From assembly GCF_963921235.1 (NCBI RefSeq), contig NC_086125.1:29636001-29700000 (forward strand): a DNA stretch of 64,000 bases, in the 5' to 3' direction. Of this stretch, positions 675 through 33,278 are shown in pieces (position 1 is the stretch's first letter; each line of letters starts with the position of its first letter). A program made the translations under genes and the position numbers. Below the pieces are notes generated by a model. The model did no database searches. It was not told the DNA's origin and saw nothing but the letters and a program-made list of their open reading frames with translations. The DNA comes from Mobula hypostoma (taxonomy: Eukaryota).

Positions 675-797
675 CTTTATGAGGGCAGCGTCCTGCTCCT
701 CCTGACCGGTGGATTTTACATCTCCAGCCACATTAATGTGCTGCTCCCTGGTGTGTGGCAGTATGGGGGCACCATGGGGGAGATGCTCACTGTTAAC
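675..797 (-). CDS. Uncharacterised gene, exon 12 (VNSEHLPHG...QDAALIK); gene continues beyond the window
   Basis: Acceptor gccttgtactgcag, donor AAG|GTAGGT; 123 nt, phase 0/0. Confidence 0.65.
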
Positions 798-1915
798 CTG
801 CAGTACAAGGCAGACAGGGTCAGTCCTGTTGTAGTGAACATCAGTCAGGGCAGCAGGGCAGGGCAGAGCCAGTACTCAGTCTGAGAATATCTATTTCTCT
901 CGTGTTAGACAATTCTGAAAGGGAAATTGTCCAGATCTCCTCTTGGCTGGGGGTCCATGCAAATTAGTGGATCTGAATGGTTACTACACCAGGGATTCTT
1001 TTACCATATGTCTATACTGAATCCATGATCAGAGTATTCCAGCACAGAGTGCACCTCAGCCATAACAAAACATTCCTTATTGCCTCCTGCTCTACTTGTG
1101 GACAGGGCCTATTTGCTCCATAGTTGTGGTGACGAGTCATAAGCAAACAGCTTATGATGTAGAGGAAGCCATTTGCAACACCAAAGGCAACTTGTATTCT
1201 AGCACATCTGACTGGAAATGGAGAGATCAGAGGGCAGCATGGCAGCATAGCGGTTAGCAAAACGCCATTACAGAGCCAGCTGCTGTCTGTAATGAGATTG
1301 TACATTCTTCCCATGACCGTATGGGTTTCCTCCAAGTGTTCTGGTTTACTCCCATGTTCTAAAGGTTAGGATTAATAAATTGTTGGCTTAGAACATAGAA
1401 ACGTAGAACAGTACAGCACAGTACAGGCCATTCAGCCCACAGTATTGTGTCATTCTTTTAACCTACTCTCAGACCAACCTAACCAACCCTCCCACATAGC
1501 CTTCCAGTTTGTATCATCCATATGCTTATTTAAGAGTTTCTTAAATGACCCTAATGTATCTGCCTCTACTAATACCCCTAATAGGGCATTCCACATACAC
1601 ACAATTCCCAGTAAAACACTTATCTTTGATGTTGCCCCCCCCCCCACCATTCTTTCCTCCAATCACCTTAAAATTATGCCCACACATATTATTAGCCAGT
1701 TCCATCTTGGGAAAAGTCTTGCCGTATACTCTGTTTATGCCCCTTATCATCTTCTATACCTCTATCAATTCATCTCTCATCCCCCTTCAATCCAAAGAGA
1801 AAAGCCCTAGTTCACTCAGCTTTTCCTCATAAGATGTGCTCTATAATCCAGGCGGCATCCTGGTAAATCTCCTCTGCACTCTCTCTATAAAGCTTCCACA
1901 TCCTTCCAGAACTGA

Positions 1916-2810
1916 TGTGACGAAAGTACACATAGACTAAGATATTGACTGTCCTGTGCTATCACCAGTGGGATCAACAGTTGATCTGCCACCTGTCTTC
2001 AGGAGAGCGAGATAAGTAAAGACAATGGAGCAGCATTTGGAAATGTTAATGAAGAGACGGGAGAGCTTAACGGAAGGAGACAGTGGTCTGGGAATTGTCA
2101 AGACCGGCTCCTCTTTGAACCCTGAACTGTTTGAAGTGATGGACAGGCGATACCCCAGCAGGGGGATAAAAAGGGACAGGTTCGCTAAGGCAACAGACAC
2201 ACGACACCCCGAGGTAACGAGACCCTGGAAGCGGTGCGTCTCCCACAAGTCGGTGGGAGTTTTGGAGGGCTGGTCGCGGGACCAAGCCATAGATGCACAG
2301 GGTGGAAAGGAACGATCGGCGGGAACCTGGTGTGTGTCCGCCCTTGCCTGGGTGTCACGTTCACTGCAGAGGAACGATCGTTTCTGAAACGGAGGGGTCA
2401 CAGTCGGTGACCTCAGAAGACATTACAAAGGGCTCGCCCAAAAGCTGACTGCGAGTAATATCGAAGGTCTGTGTGGAAGCTGTTTTTGAATATTCATTCG
2501 CTTTCTCTCTCTCTCTCTCCCACGGCAGTGATTACTGTGAACTGAACTGAACACAATTGAACTGAACTTTGTGTCACTTTGAAACTGGTCATTTACCCCT
2601 AGACGACGATAGAGCTTGATTGATCCTATTATCCTAGTTTCTGTGTACATGTGTGTTTATCATTGCTGAACTGTTGTATTCATTATCCTTTTGATTAGAG
2701 TACTGTGTTGCTTATTTCTTTAATAAAACTTTCTTAGTTCCAGTAACCCAGACTCCAACTGAGTGATCCATTTCTGCTGGTTTGGCAACCCAGTTACGGG
2801 GTACGTAACA
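1916..2810 (+). mobile_element. Solo LTR (about 895 bp) inserted in a CR1 fragment
   Basis: TGTGACG...CGTAACA termini, 4-bp target-site duplication (TSD) CTGA (1912-1915 and 2811-2814), internal AATAAA about 2722. Confidence 0.8.
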
Positions 2811-4405
2811 CTGAACACAATATTTCAAGTATGGTCTAAGCAGGGTTTCACAGGACTGCAATGTTACCTTGCGACATGCTATGTTGGTGCTACAACATGT
2901 CGCAACATTTGCGGGCTGCTCCCAGCATATTCTCAAACAGCGTTGGCACAAAATGACACATTTCACTGTCTGTTTTGATGTACATGTGACAAATAAGGTT
3001 AAACGTTAATCAGTGTTCTCAGTACAAGTAATATCAGCAGGAGGAAAACCTGACGTTCCCACCCAATCCCTTGGCATTCCTATCTGGTGAATTAGGAGTC
3101 ATCCTCACATGTCCTCAACAGAACTTTCCAAAGCGCCGCGACAATGGAAGCAGATGTTCTGTTCAGTAGTATTTGCTCTTCCAGTAACTGCCCAGTAGTC
3201 CCCATGGTACTACTTGGAGATGGGCCTATCTTACAATGATTGCAGGATCTGACCCTGTCCCATGCAAAAGCCAAGCCCTCCAACCCAATTATGCTTCTTA
3301 TGTTAATTTATATTCCTGTTAATTTAAGTTCACGTTAACTTATGCTTGTTGTCTTCAATCTCTCACTGCTGCAGGCAGAGGTTCCCACCTGCTTTAAAAT
3401 GATGACAATTATATCAGTACCCAAGAAGACCAGGGTGACCTGCCTTAATGACCATCAATCAGTTGCACTCACATCTACTGTGAGGAACTGCTTTGAGTGA
3501 TTGGTCATGGCCAGAATCAGCTCCATTCTAAGCAAGGACCGGGACCCGCTGCAGTTTCTCTGTCACAAAATAGTGCCACAGTGGATGCAATCTCACTGGC
3601 TCTCCACTCAGCCTTGGATAAAATGCTGGAGATCTGAGCAACAGACACAGAATGCTGGAGGAACTCAGTGGGTCAGGCAGCATCTATGGAGTTTCAGTAA
3701 AGAGTTGACGTTTCAGGCTGAAACCCTTTATCAGGACTGGAAAGGAAGGGGGGAAACGACAGAATAAGGAGATAGGGAAGGAAGAGAATTATAAACTAGT
3801 CAAGGGTCTCAGTTCAAAACGTCGAATGTTTATTCCTCTAATAGATGCTGCCTGATCTGCTGAGTTCCTCCAGCATTTTGTGTGTTTGAAATTTTAATTC
3901 TTCCTCAGAATGTTGACATCACTCACAGGACCATCATTTATTTTTCACCTCCATCTACCTTGTTACCAACGATTAGACCGTCTGAATAAAGATTCGGACA
4001 TGTTACTGACAGACGGTGGCTGTGTAATGGTAAAGATAAAAAATTTCCTCCAGTGCAGGATGAATGACATGCTGGTGGTTCACCGTCACTATTACTGGTT
4101 GTAGATTTTTATTCCACATTTATTTAATTACTCAGTTGAATCCATCTACACTGCTCGCTGCCTCAGTAAAGCAGCCAACGTAATCAAAGATCCTTCCCAC
4201 CCCAGGCATTTCCTTTTCTCCCCTCTCCCACTGGTATGTACCACTAGACCCAACACAGACTCCTTGAGCTGGAGGGTCTTCTTCTGGGTTGTAGCAAATA
4301 TAGAAAACATGATCAGGAGCCCAGAGTGCTGTCTGGAGATAAAGTTAGGGTTATACCCCAACCCCATCCCTTACCCTCCCCTCCATGGACTATGTCTCAG
4401 TAAAG

Positions 4406-4969
4406 TTGCAGGACCCTGGTCAGACCCCACTTGGAGTACTGTGCTCAGTTCTGGTCGCCTCACTACAGGAAGGATGTGGAAACCATAGAAAGGCTGCAGA
4501 GGAGATTTACAAGGATGTTGCCTGGATTGGGGAGCATGCCTTATGAGAATAGATTGAGTGAACTCAGCCTTTTCTCCTTGGAGCGACAGAGGATGAGAGG
4601 TGACCTGATAGAGGTGTATAAGATAATGAGAGGCATTGATCATGTGGATAGTCACAGGCTTTTCCCCAGGGCTGAAATGGCTAGCACAAGAGGGCCTAGT
4701 TTTAAGGTGCTTGGAAGCAGGTACAGAGGAGATGTCAGGGGTAAGTTTTTTTACGCAGAGAGTGGTGAGTGCGTGGAATGGGCTGCCGGCAGCGGTGGTG
4801 GAGGCGGAAAGGATAGGATCTTTTAAGAGACTCCTGGATGGATACATGGAGCTCAGAAAAATAGAGGGCTATGGGTAAGCCTAGGTAGTTCTAAGGTAAG
4901 GACATGTTCAGCACAGCTTTGTGGGCTGAAGGGCCTGTATTGTGCTGTATGTTTTCTATGTTTCTATGT
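4406..4969 (+). mobile_element. CR1-type LINE, 3' fragment
   Basis: RPHLEYCAQFWSPHYRKD...RRFTRMLPG; TTTCTATG tail. Confidence 0.9.
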
Positions 4970-32281: not shown

Positions 32282-32314
32282 AAAATAAATCTCAAGGTTG
32301 TATATGGTGATCTA

Positions 32315-32867
32315 CTCTCAGTGGCCACTTTATTAGGTACACCTACTCATTAATGCAAATATCTAATCATGTGACATCAACTTAATGTATAAAAGCATGC
32401 AGACATGGTCAAGAGGTTCAGTTGTTGTTCAGACCAAACATCACAATGGGGAAAAACTGTGATCTAGTGACTTTGTCTGTGGAATGATTGTCAGTGCCAA
32501 ATGGGGTGTTTGAGTATCTCAGAAACTGCTGATCTCCTGGGATTTTCATGCACAGCAGTCTCTGGAGTTTTCAGAGGATGGTGCAAAAAAACAGAAAAAA
32601 TATCTGGTGAACGACTGTTCTGGGGGTGAAAACCATTTGTCAACGACAGAGGTCAGAGGAGAATGTCTAGACTGGCTCAAGCTAACAGGAAGGCAACAGC
32701 AAATCAAATAACCATGTGTTACAACAGTAGTGTGCAGGAGAGCATCTCTGAATGCACAACATGTTGAACCTTGAAGTGGGTGGACTACAGCAGCAGAATA
32801 CCAGACCAGGTTCCACTCCTGAAGCCACCTTATTCTCTCCTGTCTTTAATAAAGTGGCCACTGAGTG
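32315..32867 (+). mobile_element. Non-autonomous Tc1-like DNA transposon
   Basis: TA|CTCTCAGTGGCCACTTTATTA ... TAATAAAGTGGCCACTGAGTG|TA. Confidence 0.85.
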
Positions 32868-33018
32868 TACACATACTTCGATAGTAAATTTATTTTTATC
32901 CCCTTTGTTCCTTTAAACCCAACTGCTAACTACTCTAGTGGGATTTGACATGGGACTCTAGATTATTAGATTAGGATACTGGATTACAAGATCAGGAACA
33001 ACCAATATTTTCTCTTAC

Positions 33019-33278
33019 CCTTCTGCCTGCTGCTGGACCTGACGGAAGAGGCTCGGATATGGATTTTGTGGCAGTTCTGTCCTCAGCAGCCTGGCATACA
33101 GGTCCTCTAGAAGTCCCTGAAGTCCAGTTGCATCCAAGTATTTCCACAGCAGGTTTAACCTTCGTGCTACGCTCGGGTTGCTAGATTGTGGAACCGTGAG
33201 CCTCTCAAAAATCTGGCCAGACATCTCCTTACTCTCAGCAATGCCTTTCATTCTCTGCAATTCACAGGGTCCAGTCAT
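33019..33278 (-). CDS. Uncharacterised minus-strand gene, coding exon 1 (ATG; D/D-like motif KYLDATGLQGLLEDLYARLLRTELPQNPYPSLF)
   Basis: Acceptor tttctccacag ends at 33299, with an in-frame TAA before the ATG at 33278. Donor GG|GTAAGA, phase 2. Matches ORF 33015..33278. Confidence 0.8.

What the first reader, a model, noticed from the sequence alone, without database searches (positions are those of the whole stretch)
675..33278. Unrecognised multi-exon gene (at least 638 aa) head-to-head with CDKN2D
Seen in sequence: 12 non-repetitive minus-strand segments (33278-33019, 30020-29932, 26192-26053, 25401-25208, 23974-23926, 22143-21962, 20835-20681, 19011-18722, 15250-15143, 10840-10646, 6183-6055, 797-675) have canonical GT/AG splice sites. 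Their phases chain 2,1,0,2,0,2,1,0,0,0,0 into a 1914-nt frame with no stop that runs off the window. The ORF track shows only pieces of it. Established: the human gene upstream of CDKN2D is AP1M2, on the same strand, and this protein does not resemble it or anything else I recognise. Inference: an uncharacterised gene, possibly old and lost in mammals.
Basis: partly seen in the sequence, partly recalled or inferred. Interest (0 to 1): 0.85.

Follow-up and report, generated by a model that had tools for sequence, protein, structure and literature searches.

The report
Unnamed tandem nucleotidyltransferase-fold gene beside CDKN2D
The twelve exons are a real, conserved ray gene, already listed in RefSeq as an "uncharacterized protein", that encodes two tandem copies of a nucleotidyltransferase-like module and belongs to an old, unnamed animal family not found here in mammals.

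Summary
Observation confirmed. All 12 minus-strand segments have AG/GT borders, and the phases chain as stated into a 1914-nt frame of 638 aa with no stop. The N gap (9889-10227) lies inside intron 10 and hides no coding exon.

Exons 3-12 are 100% identical to Mobula hypostoma RefSeq LOC134339297 ("uncharacterized protein"). So the gene is already modelled, though not characterised. RefSeq uses another first exon (26448-~26366).

All 12 exons are collinear in the Pristis genome, and dN/dS is 0.32. Full-length orthologues are about 1,050-1,170 aa and have no Pfam domain.

New here:
- The protein is a tandem duplication of a ~300-aa module (hhalign E 2.7e-12).
- Each module starts with an invariant P-N-P-Y element.
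- The module core folds as a Pol-beta-type nucleotidyltransferase. The best solved match is Megavirus Mg662 (Z 9.5), and the best predicted matches are giant-virus and virophage NTases.
- The second catalytic carboxylate is missing in every vertebrate module, so a non-catalytic binding or scaffold role is my preferred inference.

No mammalian relative was detected, but the searches were not exhaustive. The neighbour is an INK4 gene, best match p19INK4d, lying head-to-head about 9 kb away.

The parts
33019..33278 (-). Coding exon 1 (ATG at 33278; a conserved alternative start is Met19, 'MSGQ'). It encodes the first helical element with the invariant P-N-P-Y.
   Evidence: matches Hypanus X1/X2 and Hemitrygon. 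It is absent from the Mobula RefSeq model. Run X1 holds 0.36 of the words of 32760-33540, where the exon makes up 0.33 of the stretch; DNA runs hold 1.00.
29932..30020 (-). Coding exon 2
   Evidence: Pristis counterpart L001:10953-11039
26366..26448 (-). Alternative first coding exon used by the RefSeq model XP_062891744.1 (MGTAKPVPKSPAYAGDPTDSPRYQVAT..).
26053..26192 (-). Coding exon 3
   Evidence: 100% identical to RefSeq from here on
25208..25401 (-). Coding exon 4: NTase core strands beta1-beta2 with the degenerate G-T...D-x-L motif. dN/dS 0.21.
23926..23974 (-). Coding exon 5
21962..22143 (-). Coding exon 6 (contains the invariant Lys of the module)
20681..20835 (-). Coding exon 7 (end of the N module, H-A-E-A-Y motif). 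dN/dS 0.15.
   Evidence: An X1 contig matches 20660-20837 at 100%.
18722..19011 (-). Coding exon 8 (linker plus the start of the first helical region)
   Evidence: An X1 contig matches 18733-18988 at 100%, wholly inside the exon.
15143..15250 (-). Coding exon 9
10646..10840 (-). Coding exon 10
9889..10227 (.). Assembly gap, inside intron 10; not coding
6055..6183 (-). Coding exon 11
675..797 (-). Coding exon 12 (inter-module linker). The gene continues off the window into the second module.
42246..42371 (+). Exon 1 of the neighbouring INK4 (CDKN2D-like) gene, within a CpG island at about 42001-43500
47080..47445 (+). Exon 2 of the INK4 (CDKN2D-like) gene
   Evidence: p19INK4d 116 bits, p18INK4c 112.6 bits

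Best explanation
The segments are the first 12 coding exons of a genuine, selectively constrained protein-coding gene of the lesser devil ray. It is the locus that RefSeq calls LOC134339297 ('uncharacterized protein'). The full protein, about 1,050-1,170 aa in orthologues, belongs to an unnamed ancient family. It is built from two tandem homologous units. Each unit has a short helical element carrying an invariant Pro-Asn-Pro-Tyr, then an alpha/beta core with the Pol-beta-type nucleotidyltransferase (NTase) fold, then a helical region. This layout resembles the giant-virus Mg662/L544-type NTases, doubled as in OAS2/OAS3 or Utp22. Shown here: gene reality, orthology, the internal duplication and the fold class. 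Inferred: all vertebrate modules lack the second catalytic carboxylate and have a degenerate G[GS] motif, so the ray protein most likely does not transfer nucleotides. It more likely acts as a nucleotide- or nucleic-acid-binding or scaffolding pseudo-enzyme, with the two modules possibly packing against each other. I put that inference at about 45% on its own.
For: Gene reality:
- Splice sites and frame are as stated.
- Exons 3-12 are 100% identical to RefSeq XP_062891744.1. Identity is 91.5% to Hypanus, 92.8% to Hemitrygon and 73% to Pristis.
- All 12 exons are collinear in Pristis DNA.
- dN/dS is 0.32, with dN 0.146 and dS 0.458 over 627 codons.
- A fully spliced cDNA contig of the acipenseriform orthologue spans 9 exon blocks.
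- Run X1 holds a share of words close to the exon fraction in two stretches (0.15 against 0.13; 0.36 against 0.33), whereas DNA runs hold 1.00. Its unique contigs fall on exons 7 and 8.

Family:
- Homologues occur in sharks, rays, a skate, paddlefish/sturgeon and a chiton.
- Whole-length Foldseek hits reach an uncharacterised LOC106181062 protein (E 1.6e-40) and two further uncharacterised proteins (E 1e-20, 1e-11).

Duplication:
- hhalign of the N module against the C module gives probability 97.6% and E 2.7e-12 over 279 columns.
- The 18-module alignment is nearly gap-free, with invariant P-N-P-Y, G, F and K.

Fold:
- The module model has pLDDT 76 and pTM 0.68.
- VIA-align gives Mg662 Z 9.5 (rmsd 3.1, 132 aligned). 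Nearly all other chains with Z of 5 or more are NTase-fold proteins such as Tam41, TENT5, Tailor, PAP, TUTs, Pol beta/lambda/mu, CD-NTases and RelA/SpoT.
- BFVD gives a Pithovirus NTase at 2.7e-5, Zamilon at 3e-5 and other virophage proteins.
- PDB Foldseek and the Atlas agree.

Motifs:
- Acid 1 is D/E in 7 of 8 N modules and E in 9 of 10 C modules.
- Acid 2 is L or R in the N modules and T in all vertebrate C modules. It is D only in the chiton C module.
Against: - The fold assignment rests on a predicted model built from only 18 sequences. The best Z (9.5) is moderate and the PDB Foldseek E-values are weak (about 0.01).
- The full-length model is poor (pLDDT 43), so the helical regions and the packing of the modules are unknown.
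- I mapped the catalytic motifs from secondary structure and spacing, not from a residue-level structural superposition.
- Many polar residues of the N module are invariant from chiton to ray (D197, R200, H207, K271, H310, E312 in Pristis numbering). These could form a non-canonical active site.
- RNA evidence in this species is indirect. The runs are only guessed to be RNA, no junction-spanning contig was seen, and one contig runs 21 nt into intron 7.
- No tissue, partner or ligand is known.
Confidence: 0.75

Rival explanations
1. It is an active nucleotidyltransferase, for example an RNA-tailing enzyme or a nucleotide-second-messenger synthase or sensor of the OAS/cGAS kind. It would use a non-canonical or partly retained active site, perhaps only in one of the two units.
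For: The module has the NTase fold. The first carboxylate is kept in 16 of 18 modules, and the chiton C module has a full E-x-D. A Lys is invariant in all 18 modules, and the N module carries a block of invariant polar residues. Tandem units in which only one is active are known from OAS2/OAS3 (my knowledge). Weak fold hits include cGAS, cGLRs, MB21D2, OAS1 and CD-NTases.
Against: The second carboxylate is absent in every vertebrate module. The G[GS] motif is degenerate (R in the paddlefish N module, S-F or S-S in the stingray C modules). No third carboxylate was identified. No Pfam NTase, Mab-21 or OAS profile matches even at E 10.
Confidence: 0.25
2. It is a cilia- or sperm-type docking protein. 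On this reading the N-terminal element is an RIIa/DPY-30 dimerisation-docking domain that binds AKAP-like helices, as proposed in the first reader's companion note s1-143393.
For: The pattern GLQ..LEDL...LLR..LPxNPYP.F resembles the RIIa helix-turn-helix by eye. The model places two helices before and one after the P-N-P-Y.
Against: No RIIa or Dpy-30 Pfam hit at E up to 10. No PKA-R, ROPN, SPA17 or DPY30 chain was hit in the PDB at E up to 10. The element is repeated at the start of the second unit, so it looks like an integral part of the duplicated unit rather than a terminal docking tag.
Confidence: 0.08
3. It is the diverged orthologue of an already named vertebrate gene that my searches missed.
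For: The word-based search scored only 8,000 candidates and missed some species that it should contain. All hits carry automatic names only.
Against: Ten RefSeq or GenBank annotations all say 'uncharacterized' or 'hypothetical'. There is no Pfam family in any member. AlphaFold Swiss-Prot, which includes reviewed human and mouse proteins, gives nothing better than E 0.019. No paper mentions these loci.
Confidence: 0.05
4. It is a chance chain of open segments, a pseudogene or transposon-derived sequence.
For: The window is rich in transposon fragments, and the introns hold high-copy repeats.
Against: It is 100% identical to a RefSeq protein, has collinear exons in a species 73% identical at protein level, shows dN/dS 0.32, and has homologues in paddlefish and a chiton. 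The exons are low-depth and single-copy in the DNA and RNA runs.
Confidence: 0.01

Closest known systems
RefSeq LOC134339297 (Mobula hypostoma, XP_062891744.1) and orthologues LOC132406331 (Hypanus sabinus), LOC127584859 (Pristis pectinata), LOC122552236 (Chiloscyllium plagiosum), LOC144507598 (Mustelus asterias), LOC121310192 (Polyodon spathula), LOC135477103 (Liolophura sinensis)
   Same: This is the same gene or family. Exons 3-12 are identical to the Mobula model. Identity to the others ranges from 91% down to 32% over the window's part.
   Different: None of these records carries a name, a domain or a function.
Megavirus chilensis Mg662 / mimivirus L544-like nucleotidyltransferases, and related virophage proteins (PDB 4XUL, 4AMQ, 4AMS; BFVD A0A481Z405, V6BPH6)
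   Same: This is the best structural match of the module: Z 9.5, rmsd 3.1 A, 132 residues, and BFVD E 2.7e-5 to 5e-4 with probability 1.00. AlphaFold-DB entries named 'L544-like nucleotidyltransferase' align to the C-terminal unit, helical part included, over query residues 692-1076.
   Different: Sequence identity is only 8-14% and there is no profile-level sequence match. The viral proteins are single units of about 350-440 aa, whereas this protein has two units, each preceded by a P-N-P-Y helical element. The catalytic carboxylate pair is not kept in the vertebrate proteins.
Tandem NTase-fold proteins OAS2/OAS3 and Utp22/NOL6
   Same: These share the architecture: repeated NTase-plus-helical units in one chain, with some or all units catalytically dead (my knowledge of those families). 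Utp22/NOL6 chains appear among the weak fold hits (6zqd_UV; 7mq8_NH, Z 4.8).
   Different: There is no OAS, Mab-21 or Nrap Pfam match. The similarity is at the level of fold and architecture only, so these are probably independent duplications.
RIIa / DPY-30 dimerisation-docking domains
   Same: The helix-turn-helix with a hydrophobic pattern around a conserved Pro looks similar by eye.
   Different: No profile or PDB sequence match was found, and the element occurs twice, at the head of each unit.

Membership tests
Pol-beta-type nucleotidyltransferase fold superfamily | Alpha/beta core (helix, strand, short helix, strand, long helix, strands) that superposes on known NTases | tested here: met
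   The module model has pLDDT 76. VIA-align gives Mg662 Z 9.5, and nearly all other chains with Z of 5 or more are NTase-fold proteins. The PDB, BFVD and Atlas shape searches agree.
Pol-beta-type nucleotidyltransferase fold superfamily | hG[GS] motif after strand 1 | tested here: inconclusive
   G-T is present in 7 of 8 N modules and G-S/T in 6 of 10 C modules. It is degenerate in the paddlefish N module (R-T) and the stingray C modules (S-F, S-S). The position was mapped by spacing and predicted secondary structure only.
Pol-beta-type nucleotidyltransferase fold superfamily | [DE]h[DE]h carboxylate pair on strand 2 | tested here: not met
   The first acid is kept (D/E in 16 of 18 modules). 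The second is L or R in N modules and T in all vertebrate C modules. Only the chiton C module has E-L-D.
Pol-beta-type nucleotidyltransferase fold superfamily | Third carboxylate on a later strand, and nucleotidyl-transfer activity | not testable with these tools
   No conserved acid was seen on the predicted strand 3 (R or T there).
Mab-21 / cGAS / OAS family | Match to the Mab-21 or OAS1 profiles, or a clear structural best hit | tested here: not met
   No Pfam hit at E up to 10. cGAS, MB21D2, cGLR and OAS1 appear only as weak fold hits (E 0.02-0.16; Z 5.4) below the Mg662, Tam41, TENT5 and PAP rows.
RIIa / DPY-30 docking domain | Match to PF02197 or PF05186, or to solved D/D domains | tested here: not met
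   Searches gave no such hit.
INK4 CDK inhibitors (the neighbouring gene) | Two-exon gene encoding ankyrin repeats, with the best natural match to p19INK4d | tested here: met
   Exon 1 ends ..GQTALQ|GT and exon 2 starts VMMMG. p19INK4d scores 116 bits and p18INK4c 112.6 bits, each as a single stretch. Assignment to CDKN2D rather than CDKN2C is therefore only marginal on score.

The most novel reading that the evidence does not exclude
The family is a cellular counterpart of the giant-virus/virophage Mg662/L544-type nucleotidyltransferases, duplicated in tandem before the protostome-deuterostome split. It would act as a nucleotide-signal synthase or nucleic-acid sensor, an OAS3-like innate-immune device with a sensing dead unit and a signalling unit. 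It would have been kept in cartilaginous fishes, sturgeons, molluscs and brachiopods but lost in teleosts and tetrapods.
Probability: 0.1. Interest if true: 0.75.

Novelty: new variant of a known kind. Interest (0 to 1): 0.45.

Why it matters
The gene itself is not a discovery, because RefSeq pipelines already predict it. What is new is that nobody appears to have recognised what it is. This work gives it:
- a corrected 5' end for this species;
- a family, spanning elasmobranchs, acipenseriforms, a chiton and a probable brachiopod;
- an architecture of two homologous units;
- a fold class, the Pol-beta-type NTase fold, nearest to giant-virus and virophage enzymes.

NTase-fold proteins include many innate-immune sensors and RNA-modifying enzymes. 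An ancient tandem member that slowly evolving fishes kept and mammals apparently lost is therefore a reasonable target for biochemical study. It is also a useful marker for studies of gene loss. The function remains unknown, and genes of this 'lost in mammals' type are not rare.

Tried and rejected
- Pfam on single exons and on eight full-length orthologues gave nothing, and nothing at E 10 on the 18 modules.
- PDB sequence searches with exon 1 and with the A2 and A3 profiles gave only insignificant HDAC4 and MTA1 hits.
- The search for homologous proteins with exon 8 alone found nothing, because of the tool's length limits. The profile search with A1 returned fewer hits than the single-sequence search, because candidates are limited by shared words.
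- ESM-Atlas feature searches gave only generic large-scaffold hits at scores of 0.85 or below.
The second call covered only exons 7 and 8 and showed no contig spanning a junction.
dN/dS could therefore be computed only against Pristis.
- The 10 kb upstream of the Pristis gene holds no detectable INK4 exon, so the head-to-head arrangement could not be checked in a second species.
- The downstream acyl-CoA dehydrogenase gene could not be identified as GCDH from the single exon available.
- The two helical regions after the modules are not significantly similar to each other (hhalign E 0.08).
- Rfam found nothing in the window.
- The spliced 638-aa protein has no reference, so it was never sent whole to any search or fold tool. 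Orthologue ids were used instead.

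
Full report
**1. The observation**

I spliced the 12 minus-strand segments. Each internal exon is preceded by AG and followed by GT, and exon 1 begins with ATG at 33278. The joined sequence is 1914 nt. Frame 0 has no stop, while the other frames have 33 and 26.

The open frames usually end within a few codons of the exon borders. The only N run (9889-10227) lies in the intron between exon 10 and exon 11. 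The same species' RefSeq protein is identical and gap-free across that junction, so the gap hides no coding exon.

**2. What the gene is**

Single exons hit no Pfam family and no solved structure. A phmmer search of 1.84 billion representatives with exon 8 found three elasmobranch proteins, all called 'uncharacterized' or 'hypothetical'.

A full-length search added more homologues:
- Chiloscyllium, Pristis and Hypanus;
- Polyodon, at 40% identity over 91% of the query;
- the chiton Liolophura sinensis, at 29% identity and E 1e-70;
- cluster members from Hemitrygon, Mobula hypostoma, Hemiscyllium and Acipenser.

The window's residues 118-638 (exons 3-12) are 100% identical to Mobula hypostoma XP_062891744.1, LOC134339297. 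The locus is therefore already modelled.

**3. Constraint and expression**

All 12 exons have collinear counterparts with intact splice sites in the Pristis pectinata genome (L001). The Nei-Gojobori estimate over 627 codons gives dN 0.146, dS 0.458 and omega 0.32. Exons 4, 7, 8 and 9 are the most constrained, at 0.15-0.21.

A Logan contig (SRR26159654) of an acipenseriform carries a continuous 458-aa ORF. It aligns as nine exon blocks on the Polyodon gene, so the orthologue is spliced and expressed there.

In this species the evidence is indirect. Run X1 holds 0.15 of the words of 18722-23974, where exons make up 0.13. It holds 0.36 of the words of 32760-33540, where exon 1 makes up 0.33. DNA runs of the same organism hold 1.00, and two sister runs hold 0.00.

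X1's unique, 100%-identical contigs lie on exon 8 (18733-18988) and exon 7 (20660-20837), while most unique intron bins have zero depth. No junction-spanning contig was shown. One contig runs 21 nt into intron 7, and the runs are only guessed to be RNA. I therefore count this as weak support.

**4. Surroundings**

The neighbour on the + strand is a two-exon INK4 gene. Exon 1 is at ~42246-42371, in a CpG island, and exon 2 is at 47080-47445. Its best natural PDB matches are p19INK4d (116 bits), just above p18INK4c (112.6 bits).

The two start codons are about 9 kb apart, with LINE-like fragments between them. A shared promoter is therefore not shown.

In Pristis, Hypanus, Mobula and Hemitrygon the gene spans 50-69 kb. 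It is followed on the same strand by an acyl-CoA dehydrogenase gene of 441-443 aa.

**5. Anatomy of the protein**

Orthologues are about 1,050-1,170 aa and have no Pfam domain.

hhalign of residues 25-318 against about 627-913 (Pristis numbering) gives probability 97.6% and E 2.7e-12 over 279 columns. An alignment of 8 N-terminal and 10 C-terminal modules is almost gap-free, with invariant P-N-P-Y, a Gly, a Phe and a Lys. The duplication is present in the chiton, so it predates the split of protostomes and deuterostomes.

The window encodes the whole first unit (P-N-P-Y element, alpha/beta core and first helical region) plus the linker. The second unit lies off the window.

**6. Fold**

The full-length AlphaFold model is poor (pLDDT 43). 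Even so, Foldseek against AlphaFold-DB clusters gave:
- whole-length hits to an uncharacterised LOC106181062 protein (E 1.6e-40) and to two other uncharacterised proteins (E 1e-20 and 1e-11);
- hits of the C-terminal unit to viral-metagenome 'L544-like nucleotidyltransferase' entries.

From memory of accession ranges I take the first to be Lingula and the next two to be oomycetes. This is unverified.

A model of one module, built with the 18-module alignment, reached pLDDT 76 and pTM 0.68. VIA-align against 48,161 PDB representatives put Megavirus Mg662 first (Z 9.5, rmsd 3.1 A, 132 residues). It was followed by Tam41, TENT5, Tailor, poly(A) polymerases, TUTases, Pol beta/lambda/mu, CD-NTases and RelA/SpoT synthetases. 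Nearly all other chains with Z of 5 or more have the Pol-beta-type NTase fold.

BFVD gave significant hits to a Pithovirus 'nucleotidyl transferase' (2.7e-5), to Zamilon (3e-5), to other virophage proteins and to a mimivirus protein. The PDB Foldseek and Atlas shape searches point the same way. AlphaFold Swiss-Prot has nothing better than E 0.019.

**7. Mechanism**

I mapped the NTase signature by spacing and predicted secondary structure:
- The G[GS] position is G-T in most N modules and G-S in many C modules, but degenerate in some lineages.
- The first carboxylate is D/E in 16 of 18 modules.
- The second is Leu or Arg in N modules and Thr in every vertebrate C module. Only the chiton C module has E-L-D.
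- No third carboxylate was seen.

I therefore favour, at about 45% on its own, a non-catalytic ligand- or nucleic-acid-binding or scaffolding role for the vertebrate protein, as in other dead NTase-fold proteins. An active non-canonical enzyme is the main rival, at about 25%.

The proposed RIIa/DPY-30 identity of the N-terminal element has no profile support. It also conflicts with the repeat of the element at the head of the second unit.

**8. Novelty**

The gene model is known, though unnamed. The family description, the internal duplication, the NTase fold with giant-virus and virophage nearest neighbours, and the corrected 5' end appear to be new. No paper in the library mentions these loci.

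'Lost in mammals' is supported only by negative results from non-exhaustive searches.

Noticed in passing
window 26366-26448 (-): This is the alternative first coding exon used by RefSeq XP_062891744.1. It may be an internal-promoter isoform lacking the first P-N-P-Y element, or an annotation artefact.
   Followed up: partly
Rfam cmscan at gathering thresholds found no family anywhere in the window.
   Followed up: partly
window 19550-20600 and 20785-20974 (intron 7 / intron 6 edge): These are very high-copy repeats, with summed contig depths of thousands to more than 100,000 in all four runs of two organisms. They are evidently abundant transposon families shared by related rays.
   Followed up: no
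window 23489-23820 and 21446-21796: A 14-bp minisatellite (23.7 copies, 90% matches) lies in intron 5, and a long (CA)n tract lies in intron 6.
   Followed up: no
window 56742-57173 (-): A 143-aa ORF looks, from memory, like the N-terminal DNA-binding part of a Tigger/pogo-type transposase. LINE reverse-transcriptase-like ORF fragments lie at 35283-35750, 38452-38820, 44530-44787 and 59374-59787.
   Followed up: no
L002 (Liolophura sinensis), protein P0011 residues ~440-690: The chiton homologue carries a long low-complexity insertion (SSWLSGP / LAPGCLG repeats) in place of most of the first helical region. A separate 126-aa gene is called inside its introns.
   Followed up: no
window 32760-33540; runs X9-X12 (organism B): DNA runs of a second, related organism hold 0.35-0.41 of the exact 31-mers of this stretch, about the share taken by exon 1. 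This suggests the exon is nearly identical between the two species while its flanks differ.
   Followed up: no
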